Below are positions 45,647 through 61,400 of a stretch of 64,000 nucleotides of DNA, in pieces (position 1 is the first letter of the stretch; each line of letters begins with the position of its first letter). The stretch lies in IMG/VR virus record IMGVR_UViG_3300017991_000002, positions 124,001 to 188,000 of that record. One strand, given 5' to 3'. A program made the translations under genes and the position numbers. Under the pieces are notes generated by a model that saw nothing but the letters and a program-made list of their open reading frames with translations, was not told the DNA's origin and made no database searches.

Positions 45647-48387
45647 TTACGGTGAAGTAAACACGTTACCGCTGCAGTAGAACTTGTCCCAAACGACTTT
45701 CTTGCCGTACTGAGTCCCCAACGCTTTACGAACGACGAAATCGTCGAGGGTAATGGTCGGAGTTTCATACAGCGGGATATACGGTGCATAAATGTAACCG
45801 GTTTCCAGGAATGAAACACCCTTATACCCGACGAGGAAATCCGTCGCCGTCATATAAGGATCTTTGTAACAATCCCATTTCCCTTGAAGAGTCCCAATCT
45901 TCATGACACCCATACCGCCGGTAGCACCAGACGGAACAAAACCAGGCAGAGTTTCGATGATGTTACAAACCTCAACACCAGCGACAACCCAGTTGCCCGT
46001 TGCACGTCTGGTCTGCTGAAAGATCAGGTTAGAGGCTTCAACAAGGGTATCGAGGAATGCCTGTTTGTGCTCTGTCCAGGAAACACCCGTCGGGAGCTTC
46101 CGGTCAAAAGACACGGTACCTGCAGCAGCGATATTGGTCAAATCGCGGATTATTTCGCGGTCAATTTCAAATTTGCACTTTTGTTACTACCATCATTTGA
46201 TGGCGGGCAGGTCATCTCTGCCTGCCTCTCTACGTCACCGTAGAGGTCTGACTATATCTTCACCCACCGCTTCCTGAAGCGGGGAGGGGGCTGCCGTAGC
46301 CTCTGCAGTTTCCCACAGAGACGTAGTCGATGAACTAGAGAAAAGGAAATCTTCAGTCAAAACCAGAAAGTAAGCACTGTTTTTGGAGCACCAAGCTCGA
46401 GCGGCCTCAAACTTCTCCTCACAATAGCTCAAGAAACTTTCAGGTTTGATCTCAACCAGGAACTTTCGCCCGTCAACGAGAGTTACCAGGTAGTCCGGCA
46501 CATAGTGCTGAAACGATCCATAAGGTATTACTACCTCTTCGTACTGAATATTTGCCACGATCAGGTCGGTATCGATCAATTCCAGGAACTTCAATTCATA
46601 CGAAGACCTGTAATAAAATCTTCCCAATCTGCCGCTAAGGTAACCAGTTTTATACTGATTATTATTTCGCCTGCCCTCTGCAATCATCTTGGCCATACCC
46701 AACGAGACCTTCTTCCGATTTTCAGGATCCTTATACCTCTCCACCTGAGCCTCAGAAATCTTCTTTCTCCATTCCGGGGTTATGACCTTACCAAGAGCAC
46801 CCTGACTCATACTTTCCCTAGCCTCTTCTGAGGTATCAGTTCCAAGACGATTTCTTGTCCGTCTTGCAGCATCAGCACATTTCGGATTGTCTTTATTGGC
46901 CTTGGATATACTATCTCGATGAGACTGACTCAATTTAACTCCTTTATGAGACAGGCTCATTTGCTTTTTAGCATATCTTGAGACTATGGCATGATCTTTC
47001 TTATATACGTCAAGATCGATCTCCGGATGTGCATGCCTCAAATGACTAAGCAAATTATGAGCTTTATACTCTTTGCAGATTTGGCAAGTTATTTTTTCCA
47101 TCTTTTCTCCAGCTGCTGATTGTCTCACAGCTCGTGAGAGGTTCCAGCAATTAAGCAGCTTGTAACGCCCAGCATCTCTGCTGAGGGAGCCCAGTTTCGT
47201 TAAGCTCTTCCGCGAGGACCGCAACCAATTCTGCCTCTGCTTCAATCCCGTGAACATTCCGCAGGTTAGCAGCAGCTTCCATTGACCATCGGCTTCTCAG
47301 CTTACGGGTCCGTGCGATGACGGGCGAGCTGGTAAGCACCAAGTCAACCTCAGGCAGATTCGGGTTTCCTTCCATGTTGTAATCATACGTGGAAGTGACC
47401 AGGGTTGTATTATCAATAGTGTTACTAAAAGTCACACTGACTGAACCAGACGAGTAGTCAATGGTTCCTGTTCCATCACCGGTAAATCCCCCTGCTCCAT
47501 CATCCGTAACGGTCAGATCAGAGGCAGCGGCAGTACTGTAACCGGTGACTGTAATCGTACCAGGACGGATTGGGATAAAAGACAGAGAGCCGGTATAAGG
47601 ACCAGTAGTACCATTGGCCGTAGCAACCGTCTCAGACTCGACCTTCTCTGAGCTGTAGTAATCAGCCGCAGCAGTGTAGCCCTGAGTATCTTCAATTACC
47701 TGGCCTTTGCTGATGGCGCCTTTATTGGTACCATAAACAAACTGCAGATAGAAGACGATACTGGCAGGTCCCAGCATAGGCTGAACACTGACCAGATCAG
47801 TAGCGATCAGGTTCGGGAATATAGCTCGAATCAACGGGACTTAATTCTGCTATATTTGTTATTTACAGGGCTCTTTATCCCTGTGCTCCGATTTCTCGGA
47901 GGATCGGATCATATCATCTTCCTGGGTACTATCTTTCAGGAAGCCAGGCGCTCGTGCCTCTGTTACTGCTTTCGCTCGAGAGGTGATCTCTGAACCTTCT
48001 TCAGCCCTGGAGATATTCATCGTTACGTCTGAAGCTTGGCTGCTGATTGTCTTAGATGTAAATATGTCTGACATATGAAGATTTCCAGCAATTCACCTGG
48101 TTATTCGACAGCCATTACTGACTGAAGGCGCTCCCATTTAATCCATAAGTTTTACAGAGTGGCAACGCGAATTTTTCGAAGTTTGCTATTCCCGGAGAAG
48201 TCGTAGTCGTTGTTTCATACAGAGGATCTTTATTGGCGAAAAATCGATGCTGGCTTTCCAGCAAGAAAGCTGTCACCGTTCGCTTATAATCGTCCTCAAT
48301 AGATTCGCAAAGAGGTGACCATTTTGGGGAATTAGCAAGGCTCTCCCCTTTCTGGGTCATCTCTTCAACTAACATTTGCCGTTCCAT
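45647..48387 (-). CDS. Major capsid protein (T4 gp23-like) in three exons: complement(join(45647..46175,47203..47839,48165..48387)), 462 aa
   Basis: Splicing gives ...FEKFA/FPLIRAIFPNLIATDLVSVQPM... and ...LAEEL/KFEIDREII...; gp23 motifs TRKLRSRWSMEAA.NL and YAPYIPL. Joined length 223+637+529=1389 nt. Confidence 0.92.
46176..47202 (-). mobile_element. Group I intron (1027 nt) carrying a putative homing endonuclease
   Basis: The 5' exon ends GAGCU; the intron starts UAACGAAAC and ends G. IGS GGCUC; P AAUUGCUGGAA (47152-47142), Q AAUCAGCAG (47121-47113), R GUUCAUCGACUA (46335-46324), S AAGAUAUAGUC (46260-46250). Confidence 0.92.
46235..47101 (-). CDS. Intron-encoded endonuclease: Zn finger, NUMOD3-like repeats and TnsA-N-like PD-(D/E)XK domain (288 aa)
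   Basis: CQIC...HLRHAH; HKGVKLSQSHRDSISKA and GKVITPEWRKKISEA; YRSSYEL.F...YVPDYLV...LVEIKP. GGAG SD upstream of ATG 47101. Confidence 0.85.
   Translation of the reverse strand: MEKITCQICKEYKAHNLLSHLRHAHPEIDLDVYKKDHAIVSRYAKKQMSLSHKGVKLSQSHRDSISKANKDNPKCADAARRTRNRLGTDTSEEARESMSQGALGKVITPEWRKKISEAQVERYKDPENRKKVSLGMAKMIAEGRRNNNQYKTGYLSGRLGRFYYRSSYELKFLELIDTDLIVANIQYEEVVIPYGSFQHYVPDYLVTLVDGRKFLVEIKPESFLSYCEEKFEAARAWCSKNSAYFLVLTEDFLFSSSSTTSLWETAEATAAPSPLQEAVGEDIVRPLR
47840..48164 (-). ncRNA. Group I intron (325 nt) without an endonuclease ORF
   Basis: The 5' exon ends GCGU and the intron ends G. IGS AAUGGGA-G-CGC (48138-48128) pairs with both exons; P AAUUGCUGGAAA, Q AAUCAGCAG, R GUUCAGAGAUCA, S GAUAUGAUCC. 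Confidence 0.92.
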
Positions 48388-48415: not shown

Positions 48416-50005
48416 TTATCTCCAACCGTGTTTCTTGATAACTTTTCTTGCCAGGACCGCTGAAGAATTGTCCTGGACATCCTCCATGAGCCAACTTTCA
48501 TCATCCTCGTTAAAGTCCAAGGAATCCCCATCACCTTCTTGTCCTTCATACAAGTATCGAGATCCGCCTGTCGGCAGGGGCTCCAAGTCCATTCCTCTCC
48601 CGGAAACTACTGGTGATCCCAATGCTTCCCGGTAACCTTCCAACAAGTTAAGTGTCTGCACCATCTCCTCTTGGCTCTGGCACTGCTCCAGGATAGGTTT
48701 CAGAAACTCGGCATGCGGGTGGTCTTCGAGGATCCCCTCAAGATACGATGTGATCTGGGCCTCGTTCCCTTTTTCGAGCACGGATTCTAAGACATCTACA
48801 GATGCATTGTACTTCTCGGTTATGTCTTCGAGAGCTCCTTCCAACTGCTCTGCATACTCTGACAAAGACTCGATCTGCTTTTCTTGTTCTTCCAATCCTT
48901 CTGCCACTTCAGCAGAGCCCTCTTCGACTCTCTCTTCAAGCCTAGTCGTCAGCTCTTCGATGATTGCTTCAGATGCACCCAATTCCTCTTCCAAGGCGTT
49001 ATATGATTCAGCCATTTCACGGAATCGGTTCTTCATTTCATCGATGACGGCGACAGAGGCATTATACTTCCCCTGGATCTCGTTGAGAGTGCTTTTATCT
49101 TCTACGATAGCAGCCATCTGCTCTTGAAGAAGTTCAACATTCTCATTGATTACTTTATTATCCAGAGTACCATTTTCTTTCTCTTTCGGCATGGTATTTC
49201 CTCCTTCGGATATATTTTTACACTCTTCAGTCCCGTATGGTATCTTGGGTTGAATCAGTTCGTTTGCTTGTGATATCTCCTCTCGCAAAATGGAAACGAC
49301 GTCCTTCGTGCCTTCGGCATCCAGTCCATCGGTGTTCTCTATACTCATAAGGGCACATCTGTGCTCCTCTAATTTCAACGACATCTCAACCAGCTCGGCA
49401 GTTTCCTTTTCTTCCAAATCCTCGAGGTCAAGCCCTTTAAGATAATTGCTTATCTCCTCGAGCTTTGACACTGCCTCTACCGGGGAGAACTCAATACTTT
49501 CTGACAAAACTGCTGGAAAGGCGCCGGCAGTTGAAGGGTTGGCCACGAAGTCCCACGTCTCCAATTTATAATCGTCTTGAACGATCGGTTTGTCCCTCCC
49601 AAGGCTGCCAGTTCCTCGTGAAGAGATACCGACTCGAGTTCCGCCTTTAAACAGTTCTTGGAGTATTTTCCCGTTCGGGGTATCGAGAATTTCTGCCTCC
49701 CCGATTATAGTTCCATCGTCCTGAATATCGACTCCGGTAATTATGTGGGAGACCCTTTGAAGAGATGTTTTACCAGAACTCGGATGGTCCAACTCCCCGA
49801 ACATCCCTCGATTATCAAGCCTATCCCTAACTTTTTGCTCTTTGAGCTTTTTTCCGAACAGACCGTTCGGATAGATCCTACCGTTCTCGTTCTGAACACC
49901 TTCACGTTGGAAGACGCCTTTGACCTTCATCCGCTTCGATCCGTCGCCTTCCTCCAATATCTGGTATTGGAACGGTATCACATCAATAAGTAGTTGCTCT
50001 GTCAT
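48416..50005 (-). CDS. Prohead protease (gp21-like) fused to a coiled-coil scaffold (gp22-like)
   Basis: GVFQREGVQNENGRIYP, GELDHP, RVSHII, ILDTPNGKIL, GISSRGTGS, WDFVANPS; then about 300 aa of acidic coiled coil. Confidence 0.93.
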   Translation of the reverse strand: MTEQLLIDVIPFQYQILEEGDGSKRMKVKGVFQREGVQNENGRIYPNGLFGKKLKEQKVRDRLDNRGMFGELDHPSSGKTSLQRVSHIITGVDIQDDGTIIGEAEILDTPNGKILQELFKGGTRVGISSRGTGSLGRDKPIVQDDYKLETWDFVANPSTAGAFPAVLSESIEFSPVEAVSKLEEISNYLKGLDLEDLEEKETAELVEMSLKLEEHRCALMSIENTDGLDAEGTKDVVSILREEISQANELIQPKIPYGTEECKNISEGGNTMPKEKENGTLDNKVINENVELLQEQMAAIVEDKSTLNEIQGKYNASVAVIDEMKNRFREMAESYNALEEELGASEAIIEELTTRLEERVEEGSAEVAEGLEEQEKQIESLSEYAEQLEGALEDITEKYNASVDVLESVLEKGNEAQITSYLEGILEDHPHAEFLKPILEQCQSQEEMVQTLNLLEGYREALGSPVVSGRGMDLEPLPTGGSRYLYEGQEGDGDSLDFNEDDESWLMEDVQDNSSAVLARKVIKKHGWR

Positions 50006-50016: not shown

Positions 50017-50268
50017 CTACTGGATATCTATCTTTCCTTCCGGGAATCCCGGATACTCAGGATAGAAATGAATCTCATTAAAGTTATACAGTGCATCCCA
50101 GGCCAATTCTGGTATTTTTAATTTATGTATAGCGGTGAATACATCCTTTTTCTCCCACTCCACTTCAAAAAGCCTTCCACTCCGTAGAACGACCGTAATC
50201 GTCTCCATATCAAACGGCTCTCTTTTCAGTGTTATGTATGGCTTTTGTATCGGCTGAAAGCCTGTCAT
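50017..50268 (-). CDS. Hypothetical protein
   Basis: 83-aa ORF coupled to the upstream gene. Confidence 0.55.
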   Translation of the reverse strand: MTGFQPIQKPYITLKREPFDMETITVVLRSGRLFEVEWEKKDVFTAIHKLKIPELAWDALYNFNEIHFYPEYPGFPEGKIDIQ

Positions 50269-51266
50269 AGCTCAAACTTCTCCTTAACTATCCTGAATTC
50301 CTCGTCGGTTTTGATATACCCCTGTTTAAGAAGATTTGACTTCCTCCCCCACACTCTCGGATCCAGCCTTATTAACACTTCCACTATCTCTGGTTCATAA
50401 CCGCGGGGCTTACTTACTGCCATCTTCGAGTACCTATTAAATGCTGGCCTATTCTTATCCTCCAACACTTCGAACGCCTCGACCAAAGAATCGCACTCTT
50501 GTCTGAAGTCGCCAAATGCGACCACATACGTATTATCTTCCTCGGATATATAGGACTCAGTCGTTTTATCCTTCTGAATAAGCTGCAGGCTAGATCCTGA
50601 CGTCCACTCCTTCTCATTAGGATTACTCAGATACCTTACCTCATATCCCATATCTTTGGATCCTATAACTATCCCTTCTTTATTTGTTCCCCTATTCCTG
50701 ACACGATCACCCGGAATAAACTTTCTATTTGGGTCTGGTGACTCTTCATTAAGCATTTTTATGGGGCATAGAAGACCTTTACATAAAGGGACAGTTATCG
50801 CCTTATTGAACTCATCAGTGAATGTGACGAAGCCTCTCCTCGCTGGGATTATGGTATACTTTATACCTTTCTTTGACCCCTCTGGGAGAGTTCCAAGAAA
50901 GACAAATTGATCCCCAGGCCTGAGGTACGACAATGTATAATGGGGAATTGGGTTAGAGGAGCTCTTAGCTACCTCCTCGTATGACGCTGTCTGGACAACC
51001 GGGTTGTCAGAATCTGGATGACCATAAGCAGTCATTGACGCCCCTATAATGGTGGATCCACATTTTGGACAAGTGGAAAACCCTCCTTCAGGATCTTCTC
51101 CCTTCATCTCAAACCCACATTCAGCGTTTGTACACCGAACAACCTTTTCAGCTACTACCTTATCACCATCCCGCTTCTTAACGAACCTCTCTACGGCGGC
51201 GCTGGCCTCTAACTCTCCCTTCGCTACCTTGTCAATCATCGATCGTATTTTGGTCTTATTAGACAT
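50265..51266 (-). CDS. Multi-domain hypothetical protein (Zn ribbon, SH3/KOW-like segments)
   Basis: CTNAEC...CPKCG; FIPGDRVRNRGTNKEGIVIG. Confidence 0.7.
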   Translation of the reverse strand: MSNKTKIRSMIDKVAKGELEASAAVERFVKKRDGDKVVAEKVVRCTNAECGFEMKGEDPEGGFSTCPKCGSTIIGASMTAYGHPDSDNPVVQTASYEEVAKSSSNPIPHYTLSYLRPGDQFVFLGTLPEGSKKGIKYTIIPARRGFVTFTDEFNKAITVPLCKGLLCPIKMLNEESPDPNRKFIPGDRVRNRGTNKEGIVIGSKDMGYEVRYLSNPNEKEWTSGSSLQLIQKDKTTESYISEEDNTYVVAFGDFRQECDSLVEAFEVLEDKNRPAFNRYSKMAVSKPRGYEPEIVEVLIRLDPRVWGRKSNLLKQGYIKTDEEFRIVKEKFEL

Positions 51267-51268
51267 GA

Positions 51269-51613
51269 CTAATTTTCCAAAAGACGAGAAGCAATCTCCT
51301 TCGGAGTAGCCTTACCGTCACGAATCTCCTGTATCGACTCATGCAGTAATTTCTTCAGGTCCTTTTTATCTCCCCCTCCACCTGTAATAGGGGACTTCGG
51401 GGAGGAAATGATACGTCCCTTCTTTCTTTGGGATTTATTCTTGCTCATTCTATACAAAGGACTACTCTCCAAAAAACTCTTTGCCTCTTCTTTTTTACCC
51501 TTCGGTGCCTGTACTGCCCCCAAGGAAGATCCCTCCCCTTTTTTGGCAGTAGACTCACTATAACCTTGTAGAAGGCCGCCGAATTCATTTTCATCTATAT
51601 TATGAACTGTCAT
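51269..51613 (-). CDS. Hypothetical head-region protein
   Basis: 114-aa ORF with AGGAGAGG SD. Confidence 0.65.
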   Translation of the reverse strand: MTVHNIDENEFGGLLQGYSESTAKKGEGSSLGAVQAPKGKKEEAKSFLESSPLYRMSKNKSQRKKGRIISSPKSPITGGGGDKKDLKKLLHESIQEIRDGKATPKEIASRLLEN

Positions 51614-51915
51614 ACTAACCCTCTCCTAAAATGCTTACTTACTGTTGTTAAAGATACAGAACCTGCCCCGGGAGAAGCTTTGTCGGAAATTGTGGACCAT
51701 TTGGATTTACTATCGTCCTCCCCAGGCCTTATTCCATGAATCTTCACATACTCAGCTAACAATTGTGGACTCCCATTCACAATACTGTAAAATATTCCTG
51801 CGATTTTTCCATACGGAGTCCCCTCTTTTTTATCTCGGCCTTTACCGGCCAGTAAATGTGACCGACGCCATGCTTTCCGTAACAACTTACTTCCTTTTGT
51901 GTACGTATTCTCCAT
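51610..51915 (-). CDS. Hypothetical head-region protein
   Basis: Likely starts at MENTY (ATG 51915), just after a hairpin; contains PYGKIAGIFYSIV. Confidence 0.6.
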   Translation of the reverse strand: MENTYTKGSKLLRKAWRRSHLLAGKGRDKKEGTPYGKIAGIFYSIVNGSPQLLAEYVKIHGIRPGEDDSKSKWSTISDKASPGAGSVSLTTVSKHFRRGLV

Positions 51916-51926
51916 TGCGGAAAAAT

Positions 51927-51946
51927 GGGGGCCCACAAGGGCCCCC
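51927..51946 (-). terminator. Hairpin with short U-tract
   Basis: GGGGGCCC-TTGT-GGGCCCCC followed by ATTTTT. Confidence 0.65.
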
Positions 51947-51953
51947 TTCCTTA

Positions 51954-52223
51954 TTACGCTGTTGGACTCTTCAATAATGCCACCAGGGCATTAACTTTCT
52001 CGACCGCTGTGTCCAGAGCAGTTTCCAGCTCACCTTTCAATGTATTGAAGGTAGAAACGTCAGCCGAAGCAACCGTCTCCGGCGTGGGCCATTCATTGGT
52101 CACCAGGTCTGCTTTGAACTCGTTGAGATACTTCATACCATTAACATAAATGTTGGCATAAATGTCCCTGATCCCAACATGATCAACGTCTCGAGGTGCT
52201 TGGTTCGGATTTGTAAAAGGCAT
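51954..52223 (-). CDS. Small putative virion protein
   Basis: 89 aa with AAGGAGG SD; C-terminal coiled helix. Confidence 0.7.
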   Translation of the reverse strand: MPFTNPNQAPRDVDHVGIRDIYANIYVNGMKYLNEFKADLVTNEWPTPETVASADVSTFNTLKGELETALDTAVEKVNALVALLKSPTA

Positions 52224-52273
52224 CTTAATCCTCCTTGTTTTCGTTGGCAGGAATACTTACAGTGTTAAAATTC

Positions 52274-52969
52274 CTACTCGAGCATTTTTTTAATACTTTG
52301 AATGTGGATTTCATATCTTGGGTCCTTAAAGCGACGAAGAGTGTACATAAGGTCCTCTAAACGATCGCCAAATAGCTTCAAGTTCGAAAATGGATCAGAT
52401 TGGGAAATCGAAGCAACCAATCGATACAGAGCCGGCCTATGATCTGGATGAGCATCCATCAATAAACGATGCATGCTTGTTTTCAGGGCCCTTTTAAACC
52501 TTGACTTGTCTATGGCACTTCCTATAGTCTGAAATATCCCAAGGGTACCGAGGACAGTGGCTGCCCCTTCCGCCGCAAGAGCCGGCACCAGCAGCTTCTT
52601 TCTTTTTATCTGCGATTTCATCGTCCTATCCATTTTGGACATGTAATCTAGCCTTTTCTTGTTTGCCTCGGGGTCAGAGGAAGTAAAAAGATCATACCCT
52701 CCTTTTTGCCGTTCAAGCTCGGGTGCCATACGGAGTCTTTCAACTTCCAGACCCCTGACATCCTGCATCGTCTTGATTATCTGCGTTGCCACAGCCGCCA
52801 TTGCACCGCCAATCTTAACGATCTCGTCAAGTTTACGGCCGATTCTGGTCCATTTCGTTATCCCGCTTCTCTCATAGAGATCGAACACATACCTCGGTGA
52901 TCGATCCTCATAGAGAATCATATCAACATATGTAGAAACATCAGTCACGTCAAAACCTTTTACGGGCAT
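52274..52969 (-). CDS. Helical protein with hydrophobic segments
   Basis: LLVPALAAEGAATVLGTLGIFQTIG flanked by basic residues. Confidence 0.7.
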   Translation of the reverse strand: MPVKGFDVTDVSTYVDMILYEDRSPRYVFDLYERSGITKWTRIGRKLDEIVKIGGAMAAVATQIIKTMQDVRGLEVERLRMAPELERQKGGYDLFTSSDPEANKKRLDYMSKMDRTMKSQIKRKKLLVPALAAEGAATVLGTLGIFQTIGSAIDKSRFKRALKTSMHRLLMDAHPDHRPALYRLVASISQSDPFSNLKLFGDRLEDLMYTLRRFKDPRYEIHIQSIKKMLE

Positions 52970-53334
52970 GGCTCACCGCTTGGTAACGGCTCCCCTCCGA
53001 TAAAAATAGTTACTGTCGCCTGGTTTCCACTACTATTAGAAAGCAATAGCTGATCAATGTCCGTACCCATCACTATAAAACAAACAGAGAAGGCAATACT
53101 CGATCCCGCAAGTGATGTCTTTAGGCTGATATCCTGATCAGTAAAGATAGCAACGAACTGGGCATCATCAAACGGAATACCTACATCAAAATCTGTCGTC
53201 CCCGTGTCTATGGGAAATATGTAGGTAGCTTCCTCCGGAGTACCGATGGCGCGGGTAAAGTCATACAGCGATCGCTTTCGTTCTGTGTCTGTGGTTTTCC
53301 ACAAAGTTCCTTCTAATGTCCACGTAATTGACAT
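52960..53334 (-). CDS. Hypothetical beta-rich protein
   Basis: 124-aa ORF with GAGGA SD. Confidence 0.65.
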   Translation of the reverse strand: MSITWTLEGTLWKTTDTERKRSLYDFTRAIGTPEEATYIFPIDTGTTDFDVGIPFDDAQFVAIFTDQDISLKTSLAGSSIAFSVCFIVMGTDIDQLLLSNSSGNQATVTIFIGGEPLPSGEPCP

Positions 53335-53346
53335 ATTAATATCCTC

Positions 53347-53886
53347 TTATTTACGGGATTGCCTTACAAAGCTGAGAAAGTCTACAGCAAGATCCTGAAA
53401 CTTTTTAGGCATTTGATAAAACAAATCTTCAGCCTCGTTCTCATCTTTGGCTTTCCTAAAAATAGCCTCCAGCCACTTCATCATTAAAGCTATATCTTTA
53501 TTCTTGGCCCGAGCGTAATCAGGATCATATTTCTTCATGTACTCACGATGAGCAATAGCTCCTGCACCAGCGGTAGCAGCAAGCAAAGGAATAATCCAAC
53601 TATTTTTCTTTAACCAATTCTTGGCCCGGTTCCACAGGCTTGGCTTATACCCGTAGTAAGGGTCTGGATGGTGTCCTCCATAACGTGGCTCATAGGCCGA
53701 AAATGGATCATGCCCTACTCTTGCTTCCCATAAGACAAATTCAAACTGATTATCTTCGTGTAAATCCTCAAAAGACTCCCAGACCTGCCGACGTGGATTG
53801 AAGAATTGAAGAGAAAGCATGCCAGCAGTCTTACCGCTTAAATGCTTTCCATACATGACTTGTTCCATTAACTCGGCAGCAATCAT
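53347..53886 (-). CDS. Hypothetical protein with a hydrophobic helix
   Basis: KKNSWIIPLLAATAGAGAIAHR. Confidence 0.7.
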   Translation of the reverse strand: MIAAELMEQVMYGKHLSGKTAGMLSLQFFNPRRQVWESFEDLHEDNQFEFVLWEARVGHDPFSAYEPRYGGHHPDPYYGYKPSLWNRAKNWLKKNSWIIPLLAATAGAGAIAHREYMKKYDPDYARAKNKDIALMMKWLEAIFRKAKDENEAEDLFYQMPKKFQDLAVDFLSFVRQSRK

Positions 53887-53887
53887 C

Positions 53888-54199
53888 TTACTTTCCCTTC
53901 TTTAGCTTCCGCATATAGGCCTTGATTTTCTTAAGGTTGATCACGGAATACTCTAGCAGCTGGGCCTTTTCAACGAACTCATCTTCTTCGAGATTGGACT
54001 CCCTGAAATCCCAGTTTTCAACATCATCAAAATATTCCTCATCAATCTCATCAACTGTCTGCCAGACCCTTTCGTAAGGGTTGAAGAACTCGACATCAAG
54101 AGCCTCCATGACCATACTTTCCGGGTCAACAAAGTCAGCAGCATCGGCCGCACTGCCTTCAGTTAATACTATATTAATAAGCTCTCTTGCATTCATCAC
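53888..54199 (-). CDS. Small acidic head-region protein
   Basis: 103 aa with AAGGAG SD. Its EFFNPYERVWQT echoes QFFNPRRQVWES in the adjacent downstream gene. Confidence 0.7.
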   Translation of the reverse strand: MMNARELINIVLTEGSAADAADFVDPESMVMEALDVEFFNPYERVWQTVDEIDEEYFDDVENWDFRESNLEEDEFVEKAQLLEYSVINLKKIKAYMRKLKKGK

Positions 54200-54206
54200 C
54201 TGCTCC

Positions 54207-54590
54207 TTATGCAGTTTTGCCGCCTATCTTGACAAGGTAATCAACAACTTTGTCGGCAGCCTTTGAAGACCCGGATACCTTGGAATCTCTCCTGACAACG
54301 ATCAGCTTCTTTCTCGACTCGGGCACAACCTCTACCATTTTCCTTTTGGATATACTCAATGCCCTTCTGACAGCTTTTTGTGCCGCCCCTGTTACTGTAT
54401 TCCCTTTGATACCCTTGGCATCTACAATGGCATGGTTAACAAACTTGCTCCCAATCCTAATCCCCAATGCTGCAAGAAGCCAGCGAACAACATCCCACAC
54501 ATCTTCGTCCATCTCAGACCGCTCCACAGCATGCTCAATCAACTTAAGTTCACGTTTACTTGTATTGAGGATGTACGGGTTGTTACTCAC
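54207..54590 (-). CDS. Basic protein with an amphipathic segment
   Basis: WDVVRWLLAALGIRIGSKF. Confidence 0.65.
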   Translation of the reverse strand: MSNNPYILNTSKRELKLIEHAVERSEMDEDVWDVVRWLLAALGIRIGSKFVNHAIVDAKGIKGNTVTGAAQKAVRRALSISKRKMVEVVPESRKKLIVVRRDSKVSGSSKAADKVVDYLVKIGGKTA

Positions 54591-55050
54591 TTCCCTGGCC
54601 TACTCCGCCCCAAGAAATATCATCGAGAGCAAATCTTATTTTTACTGCGCCATCGTCGCCATTATCGTCCGCCTTGACAGCAAGTCGAATTGCATCCTCT
54701 CTCGGCAACGAGGGCATAAGTATTCTATACTTACCAGTTGCCGTGAACCTCCACGGCATAGCTCGAACACCAACATAGGTAGCAACGCCTGCAGCCATAT
54801 TCCCTTCAGCCGGCCAAAAGCCGTCAGCGGAGAGAGCAAACCAGTTCTCCTCCTCCAACTGTTCCCGATTCGAGTTATCGAAATAGAGCTGAAGTTCAAT
54901 ATAGTCCTCAGTGCCCTTGGTGTAGTCCACAAATATAGATAGCCAGCCGTTCCTGACTCCATAGGCTTCAATATGATTGTCATCGAAATCGTCGGTCAGC
55001 TCACCGCTTGCAACCACCCATTCAATCTCGTCGTTACTCCATCTCGCCAT
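54583..55050 (-). CDS. Beta-sandwich hypothetical protein
   Basis: 155-aa ORF with GGAG SD. Confidence 0.7.
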   Translation of the reverse strand: MARWSNDEIEWVVASGELTDDFDDNHIEAYGVRNGWLSIFVDYTKGTEDYIELQLYFDNSNREQLEEENWFALSADGFWPAEGNMAAGVATYVGVRAMPWRFTATGKYRILMPSLPREDAIRLAVKADDNGDDGAVKIRFALDDISWGGVGQGSE

Positions 55051-55116
55051 TAAATGTCTCCAAGGTACGGGTTATAGTTTTTAGATACCCTGAAATATAT
55101 GGAAATGTCAACCCTT

Positions 55117-55521
55117 TTATCCATACATCAGGGACTTTATCACTTCATAATTCACATCACTCCCAAACTTACCAATAACATTACCGAGATCCTCCATCAC
55201 AATAAGCAAATCCCTCGGCTTAACTTTCAGATCCTCGTTGAGGTACCCTTTAATAAAGTCGATAGATTTCCCTTCATCCCAATAAAGTCTGATTGATTCA
55301 TCAAGAGCTCTTCGTCTTAAATCACGTCTCCCGACAGCTTTTGATACTTCTTCCCTTATCTCCGCTTCCGGGGGATCTTCTACCAAGTCCTCAAAAGGAA
55401 TGACAGACTCACACAGAGGACAGACCAAGAAATCCTCACCGTTATCATCTTCGAAGAAAAATGATTTTTCAGCATCAAAGCTATCGTCACAAAATGGACA
55501 ATTAACTACAGTTTCACTCAT
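55117..55521 (-). CDS. Zn ribbon plus LYWDEG-domain protein
   Basis: CPFC...CPLC; the C-terminal domain is paralogous to 55534..55776. Confidence 0.7.
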   Translation of the reverse strand: MSETVVNCPFCDDSFDAEKSFFFEDDNGEDFLVCPLCESVIPFEDLVEDPPEAEIREEVSKAVGRRDLRRRALDESIRLYWDEGKSIDFIKGYLNEDLKVKPRDLLIVMEDLGNVIGKFGSDVNYEVIKSLMYG

Positions 55522-55533
55522 AATTTTATCCCC

Positions 55534-55776
55534 TTAAGTTGAGATCCTTCTATCAATATAATCAGATCCAACATCGCTTCCAAATCGAGCAATCGCCTCA
55601 CCGAGATACTGCATTATTTTTTTGATACTGGAAATTGATTGACCGCACTCCTCAAACAGATAATCGTCGATGAGCTCTAGATCACATCCTTCATCCCAAT
55701 AAAGCCTAAGTGCCTCCCGTAATGCCTCTCTCTCAGTCATAGCATTTTCCTTAATACAGACCCATCCGTGCTCCAC
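55534..55776 (-). CDS. LYWDEG-domain protein
   Basis: ALRLYWDEG...LGEAIARFGSDV. Confidence 0.65.
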   Translation of the reverse strand: MEHGWVCIKENAMTEREALREALRLYWDEGCDLELIDDYLFEECGQSISSIKKIMQYLGEAIARFGSDVGSDYIDRRIST

Positions 55777-56647
55777 GCTTTCTGGACTTGACAGCTTTAC
55801 GCCTCGAGGACGATTTTATTCGGGATCGAGCCTTCTTTAAAGCGGCCCGCATCGCAGGACTTGACCGAAACCTTTTGGAAGCCATCTTGCTGGCCTGTTT
55901 TGTTGGTGCATATTGAACTCGTCCGCCCCGGACTCTCTTCTTCCGCTCGACAAGATCCTGGATGAAGCCAACCTCTTCATCGGTTAACTCTTCAATAAAC
56001 TCATCCAACTCATCTTCATCAAGAGAATCGATGTAATCCATAAACGAGTCCTCGTTAAAATCATCCTCTTCCTGATATTCGTCCTCTTCAGAAAACCTCC
56101 GAAGAATTTTCAGCGATTTAGCTCTTCCTTTTTTGGCTTTCGTGCTCCACGCTTTTCTGCGAGCTTTCTTCAAAGCAGCCTTCTGTTTCGATGTTCTCCG
56201 TTTTCTCTTTTTCTTCTTTTTCCGCATAAGTTTCCCTTTGCGGACCATCCAAGCCTCCTCAATATTATCTTCCTCATCAGCAGCCTCTTCTTCCAGTCTC
56301 ATCTGCCGAAGAATATTGATAATATTGGTCTGAGGATCTGCGCCTTCTTCAATGTTATAGACATCATATTCCTCATCGACCTGACTCTCTTTGGAGCCGA
56401 CCAGCTCCTCCGGAAGGTAAAACAGTTCTCCACATGCTGAACACTCAGAAAACAGATCCCCTTCTTCATCCTCTGCAATAACCAGACTATCTGTTGTCAG
56501 CATAGCCTCACACGAAGGGCACACAAGATCTCCTTCCTGCGGCTCCGTCGGTTCCACAGTAGGAGACTCCTCTTCAAAGAGCTGCTCCCTATGAGTAATA
56601 AGTTCAAGACTTTCGCAGAAATCTTTTTTTACTTTACTCACTGTCAT
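55751..56647 (-). CDS. Prohead core-like protein (gp67/gp68-like acidic and basic tracts, Zn ribbon)
   Basis: CPSC...CSAC; D/E tracts alternate with two K/R tracts that each contain AALKKAR. Confidence 0.6.
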   Translation of the reverse strand: MTVSKVKKDFCESLELITHREQLFEEESPTVEPTEPQEGDLVCPSCEAMLTTDSLVIAEDEEGDLFSECSACGELFYLPEELVGSKESQVDEEYDVYNIEEGADPQTNIINILRQMRLEEEAADEEDNIEEAWMVRKGKLMRKKKKKRKRRTSKQKAALKKARRKAWSTKAKKGRAKSLKILRRFSEEDEYQEEDDFNEDSFMDYIDSLDEDELDEFIEELTDEEVGFIQDLVERKKRVRGGRVQYAPTKQASKMASKRFRSSPAMRAALKKARSRIKSSSRRKAVKSRKRGARMGLY

Positions 56648-56670
56648 AATAGTTCTCCTCTTTCTATCGG

Positions 56671-57210
56671 TTAAAACTCAGACATTCCAGACTGTGTCAT
56701 TCTCCTAATAACTTCTTTCACATAAACCTCTTTCTTCTCCTCCAAAGCCTCCCGAACCGCCTCATGAACATCCCCTCTGATCTCCGATCCAAGCTCCTTA
56801 AATATCTTTGGAAGATGACGATCTATCACTCTATTTATTTTATTCCTTTCCTTGTGCATCATCTCTTCTACACTGACTACCCTTCCCGTCACTCCGGCAG
56901 TGAGTAATTTTGCAAAACTCGGCTTTAACTCATTCATTACCTCGCTCACCATTTTCGGGTAGGCATCCTCTATCACCTTATACTGACTATTCTTATTTCT
57001 CATAGAGGATAATTTACTGACTATGATCCCCACTAAGGACATAAAGGCCGTAGCAAGCACCACGACAATAGCACTACTGACAGCTCTTGACGTCTCCTTC
57101 TTCAGTTCCTTAGCAGTGCCTTTAATAAACTTGGTCAGCCCCTCGTTTAGGGATTCTTCAGCACTTTTCTGCTCAAACAAAATATTATCAACTACTTTTT
57201 TTATATCCAT
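56671..57210 (-). CDS. Helical protein with a predicted transmembrane segment
   Basis: AVSSAIVVVLATAFMSLVGIIV. Confidence 0.7.
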   Translation of the reverse strand: MDIKKVVDNILFEQKSAEESLNEGLTKFIKGTAKELKKETSRAVSSAIVVVLATAFMSLVGIIVSKLSSMRNKNSQYKVIEDAYPKMVSEVMNELKPSFAKLLTAGVTGRVVSVEEMMHKERNKINRVIDRHLPKIFKELGSEIRGDVHEAVREALEEKKEVYVKEVIRRMTQSGMSEF

Positions 57211-57686
57211 TATCGTATAATCCCCTCGCTGAATAAGAAGACGATAAACTCATCCCTCAAGTCGGACAAAATATGCTCCCTGATTTTCGGAACAATTTTA
57301 GACAGTTCCTGATCGATAACCCTTGATGATTCCCTGAACTTCTTATTTATTAATGACTCTATGAATTTTTCGATCTGGGCATCAGACATGTTATCAAAAG
57401 ATCCGGACGAGTGGGCCCTTTGTAGCTCATTGACCAAAGGTCGTATCTCTGGTCCAAGCACAATGCTTATATCAATAAGAGCATCGCTCATGATCCTGGC
57501 AATAGCATCCCTGTTATCGGTCTTGCGCAGATAGACAGCAAAAAACCTGGATATCAACTTCTTTAGCTTATTCCACAACAGAAGTGACCCAGCAACAGTC
57601 GCCGCTGCCATATACCACACATGGGCCGGTCGTTTCTCCCATCCTTTAGGAACAATTCTTCCGGGAATATCCTTTATTTTTGCCAA
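57210..57686 (-). CDS. Helical protein with a predicted transmembrane segment
   Basis: VWYMAAATVAGSLLLW followed by basic NKLKK. Confidence 0.7.
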   Translation of the reverse strand: MAKIKDIPGRIVPKGWEKRPAHVWYMAAATVAGSLLLWNKLKKLISRFFAVYLRKTDNRDAIARIMSDALIDISIVLGPEIRPLVNELQRAHSSGSFDNMSDAQIEKFIESLINKKFRESSRVIDQELSKIVPKIREHILSDLRDEFIVFLFSEGIIR

Positions 57687-57938
57687 TTATTTCCCCTCTT
57701 GGTCACTTGGATCAAGCAATGATCCACACTCTGGACATTTCTTCGGATACCTCCCAGGGTATTTTGGGATCGGGAAGCCACACCAGGGGCACGTATACTT
57801 CGGGGAAATTGTTCTGCAGATAACATTCCTCATTCCTGGAGATAACTGTTCCGCTATTATATCATCAACAATATCCCCCACGGATAACCCCTCCGAAATA
57901 TTCTTTGATATTACTGCATCCGTGCTATCGAATTTCAT
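57687..57938 (-). CDS. Small double-CxxC zinc-ribbon protein
   Basis: YTCPWCGFPIPKYPGRYPKKCPECG. Confidence 0.7.
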   Translation of the reverse strand: MKFDSTDAVISKNISEGLSVGDIVDDIIAEQLSPGMRNVICRTISPKYTCPWCGFPIPKYPGRYPKKCPECGSLLDPSDQEGK

Positions 57939-58435
57939 TTCCGTCTTTTCCTTTTTGATGTAATTGGGTCTATGTATGAAACATGGGTACGTGACATACC
58001 GATCGATGGGGTAGCAATATTTGTACTCATGGTAGATTCATTCTCCACAAGACCAAGATCCCTCAGAGTATTGGACACGAGGGCATCAGGAAGAACACCC
58101 AAATATCTTAAAATAAGTTTTCTTATGTGAACATCAGTCCATGTATCCAGTGTCCCCAAATACACTGTCCTGCCAGCTTGGGATACCCAGGCCTCTTTTG
58201 TGGTCGGGTTGATTTGAAGCCTACGTCCACGGTTCCTTACCGTAACAGACTCTGATGCTATACCGTCAGTAAAAGATTTATTAACGGAAAACTTCCTACC
58301 CATGGGTATGATACCCATCACCCCGGCATCGAAGTCATCTTTCACAAATGGAGCAAGGACACGACTCATTGAAGGCGATATTGATAGAGTTGTTACCGTC
58401 TCATCTATTCCTATGTCTTCTTTTCTTCGTCTCAT
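57935..58435 (-). CDS. Hypothetical protein
   Basis: 166-aa ORF with AAGGAG SD. Confidence 0.7.
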   Translation of the reverse strand: MRRRKEDIGIDETVTTLSISPSMSRVLAPFVKDDFDAGVMGIIPMGRKFSVNKSFTDGIASESVTVRNRGRRLQINPTTKEAWVSQAGRTVYLGTLDTWTDVHIRKLILRYLGVLPDALVSNTLRDLGLVENESTMSTNIATPSIGMSRTHVSYIDPITSKRKRRK

Positions 58436-58487: not shown

Positions 58488-61400
58488 TTAAACATACACA
58501 CCAGTGCGTCCCATACTATATGAAAAATCCCTTGACCTTCTTTTTGGATCCATAAAAATACCTTTAAAGAGCTTATAAAATATAAATGGGAGAGTTATTA
58601 AGTGGGCAATTGTATGAACAATCATCCTAATATTTTTCTTGCTTTTAATAAAATCAGGATCGTCCTTCAACATTAATTTGATGGAATCGATCTTAAGTCT
58701 GGCCGCTGGGGTCTCAAGTCTTTTCTCCACTTCCCTTACTATCATTGCCTGCTGCTGGGAGGTCAACATATTAACATTAATACCTGACTGTGCCAATGAA
58801 TCAATTATCTGACGCTGAATCATATTTCCGACCTCCCTCTTAGCTCTTTGGTCAAGAGATACACCCTCGGCTATTTTTGTTACTGCGACTGCAGCTATCT
58901 TAGACACCATAAACTTAATGGACCCGCCGAGGAGTATTTTTCGTGCCTCTGGGGATGAAATCGGCCTATACTTCGTCTTCTCTTCCTCGGTCATCTTCTT
59001 CTTAAAGGACCGCTTAATAGGATGATGGAGCAGGGTGTAAATAGCACTACCGATAAGAATCCCGAACAATGCTCCAGCAACTCTGGCAGGATTATGCTCT
59101 ATTCTGTACCTCAACTTATCGGCCAATGCTTTATCATGACGTAACTTGTCCCATATTTCAATGGCCAGAAGTTCCTTTGCCTCCTCCTGGCTGACATTCC
59201 GGGCCTTCATTATCTCCGGTATCCTGTGCATGTAACGTTTCCTAAGCTCCAAATAGGCCTTTCTTAATTCTTGGCGGGTTACATAGTCAGTGGCAAGCCC
59301 TACCCCCAAATCAATTCCGCTCCCCGGACTGATTATCAGCTCCCACAAATGGTCAAAGGGATCATCCCTTTTATTCCCCATGGGAGTCAATGATTCTTGC
59401 ATCATTTCCCTTTCAAGAGGGTAATTAATTTTATCAAAAAACGCCTCCGCAGACGCCTTATCTTTGAAATCATCAGGAATTTCATTGCTCTCCCTTGCTT
59501 GTTCTACTGAAGCTATAAATTCCTTAGGTGGCTCTTTACCGAACGCGGCAAGAAACAGACGTCCTATGTCCTCATTATTGTACCCAGCAACCTCCATCTC
59601 CGCCCGGGCAATCCTTCTACCGGAACTTCCTTCTTCCGACTCAGGATCAGCATAATACTCCCATGATGATCCAGCAGCCTTTGGTCCTCCTATAATCACT
59701 GGATGACTTATGGCATATTCATGAACCATACCATCAAGGATAGCATTTCTTACGGTCTCGGTATAAACTTTCTCCAACTCATTGTCACTAATTTTTGGAT
59801 CTATCTTCTTTTTATTCCTCATAAAATCGGTTTTCTTGTTGGAGATAACCCAATAGTCCGCCATAACCCCCTTCATTGGATCAACAGACTTAATGGACTG
59901 ATAAATAGCCTGATCAACCGGTTCCTCTTCCCCCTCCCCGGGAACTCTGTAATTATGCCAGGCATCAGACAGCAGACCGACAACTTCAGGAGGAGGCTTC
60001 GTCCCTGCTGCCAATCTATATGCACTTGTAACTGATTTCAAAGCATTCTTCAGGCCATCTTTACCTCCGAACTCTTCTCTGAATCTCCTTGCCAACATTT
60101 TCAGTAATGTTCCATTGGTGAGACTTTCTATGACCACATGACAGTAATAATCGGCAAACCTCTCCCGTAAGTCATCTTCCATATCTCCCCACTTTGATTC
60201 AACAACGTCATCCATATCTTTGTCGTATTGAATAAGCCTTTGAGCAAACTCCTCATCAGTCTCATAAGGATCTCTGGTAGGCTTCGGATATTTATTACGG
60301 AATTGGCGCTCCAAGAGCCTCTTCACAGACGCTCTAGCATTCTCCATCTGATCGTCGACATATTCCTCTGCCGTCATGCTCAACAACTGCCGGAGTCTCT
60401 TCTCTTTTCCAACACCTTCTGGAGGAGGGACAACTCTTTCAAGCTCATGGGGTACCAATTTCCAGCCAAAGTCTGGCCGGCCTACGTGCCGTCCTTCGTT
60501 ATCCAGGAGGATAGGAAGACCTTCCTTATCCATACCTACAACGGCTCTTTGTCTTTCTATAATGGTCTTCCCTCGAGCAGCTTCTTTCGTTTGTATCCTC
60601 TCCATGACATCTCCGACCTCCATCCTGAAACCCTCTCCATGGCGGCCGTCCATGATATATCTCTTATATGCATTTTTAGCCTCTGCAGCCTTCTTCTCAT
60701 TTTTCCCTTTAAATTCATTAAATCTTCTCAAGGCAAGTTCAGCTTTTATTGCTTTTTTCTCTTCCTTCTCACCCGGGGACAAATTGCTCTCGAGCCCCTT
60801 TGTCAGCTCCTTCTGTTTTTCCTTTCCAGCTTCTGTCCCAGCTTCCTTTTCCGATACCTTCTGATCTGTATAGGAATAAAAAATACTATATATTCTCTTC
60901 AACTCGCTATCTGGCACCAATTTCAATGCCCCCAGATCATCAAAATGAATACCGGGGCTGGCATCAATTCTAAACTCCCGAGATTTCCGATACTTCTGTC
61001 TATCCTTATAATACTTATCTTCTTTAACGAGATCGAAGGCCTTAGCGAGCTTCGCATTGTTTCCAATAAAACCTTTATAGTTCCTGACACCTTCAAATTC
61101 AGGAGAGTTTATGACTATATTCATCCCGCCAGAATGTCCCGGTCTTGTGTTGGCATAGTTAATGAATTCCCCAGCCGAACTTAATGGTGCCATCTCTTTT
61201 CTCAACTGGACCAGCTCCCTGTTGCCGGGATTCATTAAGAGGGATATTCTTCTATCGTCCTCCTGCTTTTTGGTCAGTTCAGCGGTTCCGAAATGGGACT
61301 CTGCTGCTCGAGACAGTTTCCTCAGCTTCGTAAGTGCGGGAAGAGCAGCACCTTTAACAAAACTTCCACCATCAAGAGCATCGTAAGTGATATCTCGGAT

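What the first reader, a model, noticed from the sequence alone, without database searches (positions are those of the whole stretch)
50265..57938. Head-cargo cluster with a shared amphipathic motif ending in (L/I)xE
Seen: NARELINIVLTE-G (53888..54199), DIKKVVDNILFE-Q and SLNE-G (56671..57210), SVGDIVDDIIAE-Q (57687..57938), TPKEIASRLLE (51269..51613), with looser IAAELMEQVMYG (53347..53886) and KIRSMIDKVAKGE (50265..51266). Known: T4 internal proteins carry a short capsid-targeting sequence removed by gp21 after Glu. Inference: a new targeting code that loads about a dozen unknown proteins into the head for delivery at infection.
Basis: inference. Interest (0 to 1): 0.6.

Follow-up and report, generated by a model that had tools for sequence, protein, structure and literature searches.

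The report
T4-style protease tags on head proteins
About twenty unknown small genes sit just upstream of a T4-type head-maturation protease in an uncultured 205-kb phage, and most begin with a short helix ending in that protease family's known cut site (Leu/Ile-x-Glu), so they look like T4-style prohead core and internal proteins rather than carriers of a new targeting code.

Summary
All seven quoted peptides are present at the stated coordinates. Six are N-terminal and one is C-terminal.

They do not form one sharply shared motif. An unbiased test of N-terminal similarity gives p=0.09.

The tripeptide they end in is enriched. [LI]xE occurs in the first 35 residues of 12 of 18 cluster proteins, against 67 of 221 elsewhere in the genome (p=0.003). 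Six control tripeptides show no enrichment. In 8 of 16 orthologue families every member has such a site, against 0 of 9 neighbouring neck and tail families.

The gene immediately downstream is a Peptidase_S77 (T4 gp21-like) protease fused to a scaffold, followed by a Gp23-like capsid gene. L/I-x-E is the published gp21 cleavage motif. T4 core and internal proteins carry N-terminal peptides of the same shape, including the capsid targeting sequence.

My reading is therefore the known T4 arrangement in a very distant relative: a block of prohead core and internal proteins with protease-removable N-terminal peptides. It is not a new code. Packaging, cleavage and delivery are all untested.

Two side findings are weaker. 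There is a faint two-helix N-terminal module. A neighbouring 1405-residue membrane protein is depleted in [LI]xE and enriched in [LI]xD.

The parts
48416..50005 (-). Prohead protease (gp21-like, residues ~1-170) fused to a coiled-coil scaffold domain, 529 aa. N-terminus ends ILE18 before E.
   Evidence: Pfam Peptidase_S77 2e-13. phrog_207 head maturation protease 1.7e-44. The only PDB sequence hit is T4 gp21, 5jbl, E 6e-6. The catalytic His (GELDHP) and Ser (SSRG) columns are invariant with T4 gp21. It has 29 [LI]xE against ~13.6 expected, the highest z (+5) in the genome; 11 of the 29 are kept in the L001 orthologue.
48151..48387 (-). First coding piece of the Gp23-like major capsid gene, with LLE44 and LYE57 in the propeptide region.
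   Evidence: tblastn with the intact L001 capsid protein. Alignments A2 and A7 show both LxE sites kept in L001 and L002 and partly in L009 and L010. The experimentally cut T4 site lies in a T4-specific insertion, so positional homology of the cut is not shown.
50017..50268 (-). 83-aa conserved small protein, with no N-terminal site retained in orthologues.
   Evidence: Orthologues in L001 and L002.
50265..51266 (-). 333-aa zinc-ribbon protein. Its N-terminal helix (M10, V14, G17 invariant) is followed by a variable linker. The window copy has ELE20 and AVE26; the orthologues have IEE26 and ISE29.
   Evidence: Alignment A1. No family hit. The atlas search gave no lead.
51269..51613 (-). 114-aa basic protein.
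   Evidence: The C-terminal LLE is not kept in the L002 orthologue.
51610..51936 (-). 108-aa basic protein without an N-terminal site.
   Evidence: Orthologue in L017.
51954..52223 (-). 89-aa acidic protein with no retained site.
   Evidence: Orthologues in L017 and L002 at 44% identity.
52274..52969 (-). 231-aa basic protein. It has an acidic N-terminal peptide with LYE21 and LYE33, then a basic mature part.
   Evidence: Strict 8-mer hit. The orthologues have LTE24 (L002) and IIE21 (L017) just before the conserved W..GRKLD block. Propeptide charge is -4 and mature pI is 10.1.
52960..53334 (-). 124-aa acidic all-beta protein with no [LI]xE at all. Probably not a protease substrate.
   Evidence: AlphaFold model of six strands, pLDDT 61. 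Weak jelly-roll/cupin-like matches, best 6h9c_b E 2e-3. No sites in any of the three orthologues.
53347..53886 (-). 179-aa paralogue of the next gene. N-terminus ends LME8 before Q.
   Evidence: Family alignments A4 and A5. Homologues have LLE8 before Q (P0125) and LNE9 before I (L017), but LLD8 before K in L002.
53888..54199 (-). 103-aa acidic protein. Its N-terminal helix ends LTE14 before G.
   Evidence: Strict 8-mer hit. In the AlphaFold model, residues 1-24 are low-confidence helices (helix 4-14) apart from a confident core at residues 30-90. Homologues have VLE before G, and VLD before G in one, followed by (L/I)DE before D.
54207..54590 (-). 127-aa basic protein with LIE19 (IDE23 in L002).
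54583..55050 (-). 155-aa acidic protein without N-terminal sites in either orthologue.
55117..56647 (-). Three related acidic proteins (134, 80 and 298 aa) with zinc ribbons and a shared LYWDEG...FGSD segment. They are dense in [LI]xE. LFE25 before E is kept in the L017 orthologue of the 298-aa protein.
   Evidence: phrog_1053 (unknown function) 9e-18 for the Lys/Arg-rich part. The pooled acidic helical class has 18 [LI]xE against 9.7 expected beyond residue 40; the class was chosen partly by site density.
56671..57210 (-). 179-aa basic protein with one predicted membrane segment. N-terminal sites are LFE13 before Q and LNE23 before G.
   Evidence: Strict 8-mer hit. The L017 orthologue has LLE16 before G and LSE30 before G. 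There is no homologue among 5.8 billion proteins by word search.
57210..57686 (-). 158-aa basic protein with a hydrophobic segment. The window copy has no N-terminal site.
   Evidence: The L017 orthologue starts with a two-helix-like peptide.
57687..57938 (-). 83-aa zinc-ribbon protein with ISE16 before G and IAE30 before Q.
   Evidence: Strict 8-mer hit. Both sites are column-conserved in the L017 orthologue (IAE before G, LGE) at 40% identity.
57935..58435 (-). 166-aa basic protein with IDE12.
   Evidence: No orthologue was seen.
58488..62705 (-). 1405-aa basic protein with predicted membrane segments near both ends. It is depleted in [LI]xE.
   Evidence: 8 sites against ~20 expected; none of 5000 block shuffles was as low; it has the lowest z of 143 proteins. 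[LI]xD is 20 against 11. Five other control patterns are at expectation. The L017 orthologue (partial) has 6 against 11.2, p=0.047. No family or atlas hit.

Best explanation
The interval is the prohead-core part of a head-morphogenesis operon in a complete 205-kb uncultured phage. The phage is a very distant relative of T4. Roughly half to two thirds of the ~20 small proteins encoded upstream of the gp21-type protease-scaffold fusion carry a short N-terminal helix of 8-33 residues. This helix is often acidic and ends in Leu/Ile-x-Glu.

By analogy with T4 I propose the following. These peptides hold the proteins in the scaffolding core while the prohead assembles. The protease then cuts after the Glu. 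Acidic, site-rich members are degraded and leave, like T4 gp22, gp67 and gp68. Basic or membrane-segment members lose only the tag and stay with the DNA as internal or ejection proteins, like T4 IPI-III and Alt.

Shown here: gene order; protease family and catalytic residues; enrichment, residue specificity and orthologue retention of the N-terminal [LI]xE.

Inferred: the specificity of this protease, actual cleavage, presence in virions, and delivery into the host.
For: - The protease is Peptidase_S77. It aligns with the T4 gp21 catalytic His and Ser and is followed by a Gp23-like capsid gene.
- The published gp21 motif is L/I-x-E. In T4 the first 10 residues of IPIII suffice for packaging: residues 4 and 7 matter for targeting, residues 8 and 10 for cutting, and Asp at position 10 blocks cutting but not targeting (PMC9026906).
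- The T4 core composition and processing are described in PMC9958956.
- T4 N-termini read directly have the same shape.
- N-terminal [LI]xE occurs in 12/18 cluster proteins against 67/221 elsewhere (p=0.0026), with six control tripeptides showing no enrichment.
- In 8/16 orthologue families every member has a site, against 0/9 neck and tail families (p=0.012).
- The scaffold fusion is the most [LI]xE-rich protein in the genome.
- The N-terminal 24 residues of the 103-aa protein model as detached low-confidence helices ahead of a confident core.
- The N-terminal residues are among the few invariant positions in two families.
- Several candidates combine an acidic tag with a very basic mature part, as the T4 internal proteins do.
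Against: - No proteome, no cleavage data and no cultured phage exist.
- The peptides are not significantly similar to each other in an unbiased test (p=0.09).
- Column-strict conservation of N-terminal sites is no higher than for internal sites.
- Some orthologues have Asp or no acidic residue at the expected P1 position.
- [LI]xE is a frequent tripeptide: 30% of all proteins have one in the first 35 residues.
- The excess over the 25 neck and tail genes alone is only p about 0.07.
- The portal gene is not adjacent; it lies on the other strand about 55 kb away.
- No cluster protein resembles any known virion protein.
- The capsid cleavage site cannot be placed by homology with T4.
Confidence: 0.55

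Rival explanations
1. Chance plus composition. Small helical phage proteins often begin with amphipathic, Glu-rich helices. The reader picked look-alikes, and the [LI]xE near the start has no function.
For: - Unbiased N-terminal similarity test: p=0.09.
- The strict pattern was defined after seeing the instances.
- No excess column conservation.
- 30% background rate.
- The two-helix profile recovers only 4 of 7 members when each is left out.
Against: - The motif fixed beforehand from T4 is enriched (p=0.003), with specificity for L/I at P3 and E at P1, while six similar tripeptides show no enrichment.
- L+I is actually lower in these N-termini than elsewhere.
- Retention across orthologues is 8/16 against 0/9.
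- The genes sit next to a protease family with exactly this specificity.
Confidence: 0.15
2. The N-terminal helices are real but serve another purpose, for example membrane association or oligomerisation of assembly, lysis or host-takeover factors. The proteins are not packaged, and the nearby protease is irrelevant to them.
For: - Several members have hydrophobic segments, zinc ribbons or Lys/Arg-rich tails.
- T4 proheads assemble on the inner membrane (PMC9958956).
- Two of the best two-helix peptides belong to genes far from the head operon, next to an exonuclease and a CHAP-domain gene.
- The 50265-51266 family conserves the helix but not a site at its end.
Against: - This does not explain why L/I-x-E specifically, and not related tripeptides, is enriched.
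- It does not explain the acidic-tag, basic-body arrangement typical of T4 internal proteins.
- T4 internal protein genes are themselves scattered outside the head gene block.
Confidence: 0.2
3. One reading: a new capsid-targeting code, distinct from T4's, loads about a dozen proteins for delivery at infection.
For: - The cluster proteins and their tags have no sequence homology to the T4 tag or to any known family.
- A weak two-helix extension (hydrophobic pair, two residues, hydrophobic pair, Gly, a Pro-containing turn, then a second helix ending in [LI]xE) recurs in this lineage and not in T4.
Against:
- The protease is a gp21 homologue.
- Tag length and position match T4.
- The two-helix module has weak statistical support.
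- Delivery is untested.
Confidence: 0.1

Closest known systems
T4 capsid targeting sequence on internal proteins IPI-III and Alt (Mullaney and Black 1996, as reviewed in PMC9026906 and PMC3012670)
   Same: An N-terminal peptide of about 10-20 residues ends in L/I-x-E. It is cut by a Peptidase_S77 protease. The cargo proteins are otherwise unrelated and often basic. Asp at P1 is tolerated for targeting. Some cargo genes lie outside the head gene block.
   Different: There is no sequence homology to the T4 tag. Tags here run from 8 to 33 residues and often hold two candidate sites. Most genes are clustered directly upstream of the protease. Several carry membrane segments or zinc ribbons. Nothing has been shown experimentally.
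T4 prohead core proteins gp22, gp67 and gp68
   Same: They occupy the same genomic position (T4 genes 67 and 68 lie directly upstream of gene 21). They are acidic and helical with many L/I-x-E sites, and are degraded to peptides. Here the scaffold is fused to the protease and is the most site-rich protein. The acidic helical cluster members are also site-rich.
   Different: There is no detectable homology. There are far more genes (about 20 against 2), and they include paralogue families.
Processed head, inner-body and ejection proteins of phiKZ, 201phi2-1 and SPN3US (PMC5694885, PMC9026906)
   Same: Many head proteins, including paralogue families and proteins with membrane helices, carry N-terminal propeptides removed after Glu by a gp21-related protease. 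Extra sites occur inside the propeptides.
   Different: Those proteases prefer S/A-x-E or A-x-E, and the propeptides are often longer than 100 residues. The protease here is much closer to T4 gp21, and the motif has L/I at P3.
Cargo-loading peptides of encapsulins and the coat-binding helix-turn-helix of the P22 scaffolding protein (from my own knowledge, not tested here)
   Same: Short terminal helical peptides address proteins to the inside of an HK97-fold shell.
   Different: Those peptides are C-terminal, bind the shell protein directly, and are not removed by a maturation protease.

Membership tests
Peptidase_S77 (T4 gp21-type prohead protease), for the gene at 48416-50005 | Profile match above the curated threshold | tested here: met
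   PF03420 scores 50.7 bits against a cut-off of 27, E 2e-13. phrog_207 1.7e-44. PDB 5jbl E 6e-6.
Peptidase_S77 (T4 gp21-type prohead protease), for the gene at 48416-50005 | Catalytic His and Ser in place | tested here: met
   The His of GELDHP and the Ser of SSRG are invariant columns with T4 gp21 H85 and S140-141.
Peptidase_S77 (T4 gp21-type prohead protease), for the gene at 48416-50005 | Cleaves after Glu in L/I-x-E | not testable with these tools
   Indirect support only: excess of sites in the scaffold, residue-specific N-terminal enrichment, and depletion in the 1405-aa protein.
T4-type tagged internal or core proteins (capsid targeting sequence) | Short N-terminal peptide ending in L/I-x-E | tested here: met
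   12 of 18 cluster proteins have a site within 35 residues. In 8 of 16 families every orthologue has one. This is not met for 54583-55050, 52960-53334, 51610-51936 and 57210-57686.
T4-type tagged internal or core proteins (capsid targeting sequence) | Sequence homology to the T4 tag or to T4 internal or core proteins | tested here: not met
   No PHROG or Pfam hit. The profile of the N-terminal module finds nothing in T4 head or internal-protein loci. The resemblance is only at pattern level.
T4-type tagged internal or core proteins (capsid targeting sequence) | Tag is removed by the prohead protease | not testable with these tools
   Needs a cleavage assay or proteomics.
T4-type tagged internal or core proteins (capsid targeting sequence) | Tag is sufficient to bring a protein into the prohead core | not testable with these tools
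   The complex prediction of scaffold domain, capsid propeptide and tagged protein gave no answer.
T4-type tagged internal or core proteins (capsid targeting sequence) | Protein present inside mature heads and ejected | not testable with these tools
   The phage is uncultured and no virion data exist.

The most novel reading that the evidence does not exclude
This lineage may have elaborated the T4 tag into a portable two-helix propeptide: helix, Gly/Pro turn, then a second helix ending in (L/I)xE. At least ten unrelated proteins would carry it, including very basic ones encoded far from the head operon.

It would also pack a 1405-residue membrane-spanning protein that has been purged of the protease's motif, with LxE replaced by LxD. 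That would point to a T4-like phage with a large membrane-active ejection apparatus or inner body.

It would also mean that site avoidance could be used to read head-interior residency from sequence alone.
Probability: 0.15. Interest if true: 0.6.

Novelty: new member of a known kind. Interest (0 to 1): 0.4.

Why it matters
If confirmed, the T4 rule that a short N-terminal tag ending in L/I-x-E brings a protein into the head and is then removed would hold in a relative so distant that only the protease, capsid, portal and tail core are recognisable. That would make the rule a general property of gp21-type phages rather than of the T-even group.

It would assign a role to about twenty orphan genes. 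It would also give a cheap sequence test for finding packaged proteins, which often counter host defences, in uncultured phage genomes. The test combines an N-terminal site next to an S77 protease, an acidic tag on a basic body, and site avoidance in long resident proteins.

It is not a new principle.

Tried and rejected
- **Close relatives.** There is no near DNA match in phage records. Only three related metagenomic phages hold the cluster: L002/L003/L005-L007, and L001 plus L017, which are two contigs of one sample. More distant S77 phages (L009, L010) lack the cluster and the tags.
- **Family searches.** All cluster proteins are orphans in PHROGs and Pfam. The 179-aa and 170-aa proteins have no homologues by word search. 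The atlas gave nothing usable.
- **Two-helix module.** I hand-picked 11 N-termini. The profile recovers left-out members at rank 1-2 in only 4 of 7 cases. It finds non-seed cluster N-termini in the second phage only at E 0.5-47. It has no Pfam match, so a resemblance to RIIa or Dpy-30 docking domains recalled from memory was not borne out. It has no match in T4, so a resemblance to the gp67 N-terminus was rejected.
- **Capsid cleavage site.** The cut T4 site lies in a T4-only insertion, so it cannot be transferred by alignment.
- **Late promoter.** The T4 late-promoter box TATAAATA occurs once in the window against 3 expected.
- **Site depletion in small basic cluster proteins.** Absent: 10 against 9.2 expected.
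- **Complex prediction** (scaffold domain, capsid propeptide, 103-aa protein): no answer, score 0.00. This counts neither for nor against binding.
- **Fold searches.** The 103-aa model has no match. The 124-aa model gives only weak jelly-roll or cupin-like rows.
- **Portal.** I expected it next to the cluster, but it is at genome 115966-117267 on the other strand. Terminase_6N was not found.

The capsid gene is interrupted. I compared it piece by piece by reference and did not join the pieces.

Full report
**Setting.** The window is bases 124001-188000 of a single 205,367-base virus record with direct terminal repeats, estimated to be complete. Its own contig is a JGI metagenome contig. No phage record is close at the DNA level.

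From 64 kb down to 12.5 kb the window is one long minus-strand block of structural genes. In it, 48416-50005 encodes a 529-residue protein. Its first ~170 residues match Peptidase_S77 (T4 gp21; PF03420 2e-13; phrog_207; the only PDB sequence hit is gp21 5jbl). The catalytic His and Ser align with T4. The remaining 360 residues are coiled-coil scaffold.

Directly downstream is a Gp23-like capsid gene in three pieces, followed by neck, sheath, tube and baseplate genes. The phage is therefore a very distant member of the T4-like head and tail lineage. The protease domain is at best 45% identical to that of any isolated phage. The portal gene is elsewhere, on the plus strand at genome 115966-117267.

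**The observation.** Six are at N-termini. The seventh (51269-51613) is at the C-terminus, one residue before the stop, and is not kept in the orthologue.

They are not one clean shared sequence. Comparing the best ungapped 9-mer similarity among cluster N-termini with 5000 random protein sets gives p=0.09. A strict amphipathic 8-mer, written after seeing the instances, is found at 4 cluster N-termini against 0.47 expected.

The informative test uses a motif fixed in advance from the literature. T4 gp21 cuts after Glu in L/I-x-E (PMC9026906).
- [LI]xE occurs within the first 35 residues of 12 of 18 cluster proteins, against 67 of 221 other proteins of the genome (p=0.0026).
- The result holds for windows of 15 to 40 residues and when likely spurious ORFs are removed.
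- Six near-identical control tripeptides show no excess: Asp for Glu; Val/Ala, Lys/Arg or Phe/Met/Val for Leu/Ile; reversed order; other spacing. Leu+Ile is lower in these N-termini than elsewhere.
- Against the 25 neck and tail genes alone the excess is only p about 0.07.

**Relatives.** Only three related phages carry the cluster. One is a 20.5-kb JGI/IMG-VR contig (L002 and its copies). The second is a pair of contigs from one sequencing run (L017 ends where L001 begins), which together show the whole cluster in the same order. Protease identity is 39-42%. Sixteen gene families can be compared.

In eight of them every orthologue has an [LI]xE in the first 35 residues. None of the nine neck and tail families next door does (p=0.012). 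Examples:
- ISE then G in the window, against IAE then G.
- LFE then Q, against LLE then G.
- LNE then G, against LSE then G.
- LFE then E in both.
- LYE, LTE and IIE just before a conserved block.
- LME, LLE and LNE at residues 8-9.

The register often shifts by a residue or two, and some orthologues have Asp or nothing at P1. Counted strictly by alignment column, N-terminal sites are no better conserved than internal ones (6/23 against 21/69).

The N-terminal helix itself is under constraint. In the 333-residue family, M10, V14 and G17 are invariant ahead of a variable linker. In the family of 53888-54199 and 53347-53886, four of the ten invariant positions are in the first seven residues. 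An AlphaFold model of the 103-residue protein puts residues 1-24 in low-confidence helices (helix 4-14 ends at the predicted P1 Glu), apart from a confident core.

**Comparison with T4.** I read the T4 genes directly. IPII and IPIII start with a 10-residue peptide ending FIAE. Alt ends LFDE, gp22 LIAE, gp24 LRE, gp67 LIE and gp21 LIE.

The reviews state the following:
- The first ten residues of IPIII suffice for packaging. Residues 4 and 7 matter for targeting and residues 8 and 10 for cutting. Asp at position 10 blocks cutting but not targeting.
- The internal proteins of T-even phages share only this tag.
- gp22, gp67 and gp68 are degraded, while the internal proteins and Alt lose only small N-terminal peptides.
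- T4 genes 67 and 68 occupy the position directly upstream of gene 21.

It is not a new code. There is no sequence homology between these proteins or tags and anything in T4.

**What the cluster holds.** The proteins fall into three descriptive groups.
- **Acidic helical proteins:** 53888-54199, the three related proteins in 55117-56647, and 57687-57938. They are rich in internal [LI]xE (18 against 9.7 expected beyond residue 40), as is the scaffold (29 against 13.6, the highest in the genome). I read them as degradable core proteins. This group was chosen partly by site density, so the figure is descriptive only.
- **Basic proteins,** several with a hydrophobic segment or Lys/Arg-rich tails: 52274-52969, 56671-57210, 54207-54590, 57935-58435 and 51269-51613. 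They have an acidic N-terminal tag and no internal excess. I read them as candidates for proteins that stay in the head.
- **Acidic beta-rich proteins** with no sites in any orthologue: 54583-55050 and 52960-53334. The latter models weakly as a jelly-roll-like sandwich. They are probably not substrates.

Paralogy inside the cluster recalls the processed head-protein families of phiKZ-like phages.

**Two further leads.**

First, many tags look like a longer two-helix unit: a hydrophobic pair, two residues, a hydrophobic pair, Gly, a turn often containing Pro, then a second helix ending in [LI]xE. Its best copies are on small, extremely basic proteins outside the window, at genome 47613-48125 and 45956-46189. 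This recalls the scattered T4 internal-protein genes. Support is weak. Only 4 of 7 members are recovered when left out. In the second phage the profile ranks five cluster N-termini among its top seven hits, but with poor E-values for the non-orthologous ones.

Second, the 1405-residue basic protein just upstream (58488-62705), with hydrophobic segments near both ends, has 8 [LI]xE against about 20 expected. None of 5000 block shuffles is as low, and it has the lowest z of 143 proteins. It has 20 [LI]xD against 11 expected, while five other control patterns are at expectation. Its partial orthologue shows a weaker deficit (6 against 11.2) and no Asp excess. This is what selection against cutting by an L/I-x-E protease would produce in a protein that lives in the prohead. 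With 143 proteins tested it is suggestive, not established.

**Verdict.**
It is weaker than stated as a shared motif.
- The cargo idea is plausible and follows a well-studied precedent.
- The claim of a new code is not supported.
- I put 0.55 on the cluster being prohead core and internal proteins with protease-removable tags.
- Everything beyond sequence statistics and homology of the protease is inferred.

The complex prediction gave no answer. The capsid gene pieces were compared one by one by reference and were not joined.

Noticed in passing
window 45650-48387 (-): The Gp23-like major capsid gene is in three coding pieces: 48387-48151, 47837-47199 and 46183-45650. The first gap holds a group I intron (Rfam RF00028, 47885-48165, 64 bits). 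The second gap, about 1 kb, holds an ORF (46235-47257) with a TnsA-like endonuclease N-terminal domain (PF08722, 3e-10). The relative L002 has a similar endonuclease ORF after a truncated capsid ORF.
   Followed up: partly
L002:5842-8505 (+): The orthologous protease in the relative is 887 aa. It has an insert of about 350 residues immediately after the catalytic-His motif GELDHP. The insert starts with Cys, and the Peptidase_S77 match is split in two around it. It is intein-like by position, but there is no Pfam intein hit.
   Followed up: partly
window 63129-63653 (-); L012:11-1687 and L012:9447-9890 (-): Three proteins (174, 558 and 147 aa) share a nearly identical N-terminal module of about 35 residues. 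These are the top N-terminal similarity scores in the whole genome. The module is probably a common attachment module of fibre or receptor-binding proteins.
   Followed up: no
window 58488-62705 (-): A 1405-aa orphan protein with hydrophobic segments near both ends is the protein most depleted in [LI]xE in the genome (8 against ~20 expected) and is enriched in [LI]xD (20 against 11).
   Followed up: yes
L011:3382-11095 (-), outside the window: Four adjacent orphan proteins (300, 278, 716 and 542 aa) at the start of the same long minus-strand block are strongly enriched in [LI]xE (z 2.9-4.2). Neighbours start MASIQE..., MASIRE... and MNLQE.... This may be a second set of protease substrates.
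   Followed up: partly
L013:1957-2190 and L013:3614-4126 (-), outside the window: Two small proteins are very basic after an acidic N-terminal two-helix peptide ending ILE or LLE (mature pI 11.6 and 11.0). They lie next to an RNase_T-type exonuclease and a CHAP-domain gene. They resemble internal proteins but are encoded far from the head genes.
   Followed up: partly
window 52960-53334 (-): This 124-aa acidic protein models as an all-beta sandwich. It gives weak matches to single jelly-roll virus proteins and cupins (best E 2e-3, model pLDDT 61).
   Followed up: partly
L012:2752-3138 (-), outside the window: A 128-aa protein has an N-terminus that looks like a CheY-type response-regulator receiver domain, set among fibre-like genes.
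   Followed up: no
window 62627-63004 (-): A 125-aa basic ORF overlaps the start of the 1405-aa gene. It has a borderline BRX-domain hit (24.1 bits against a cut-off of 24.5), which is probably spurious.
   Followed up: no
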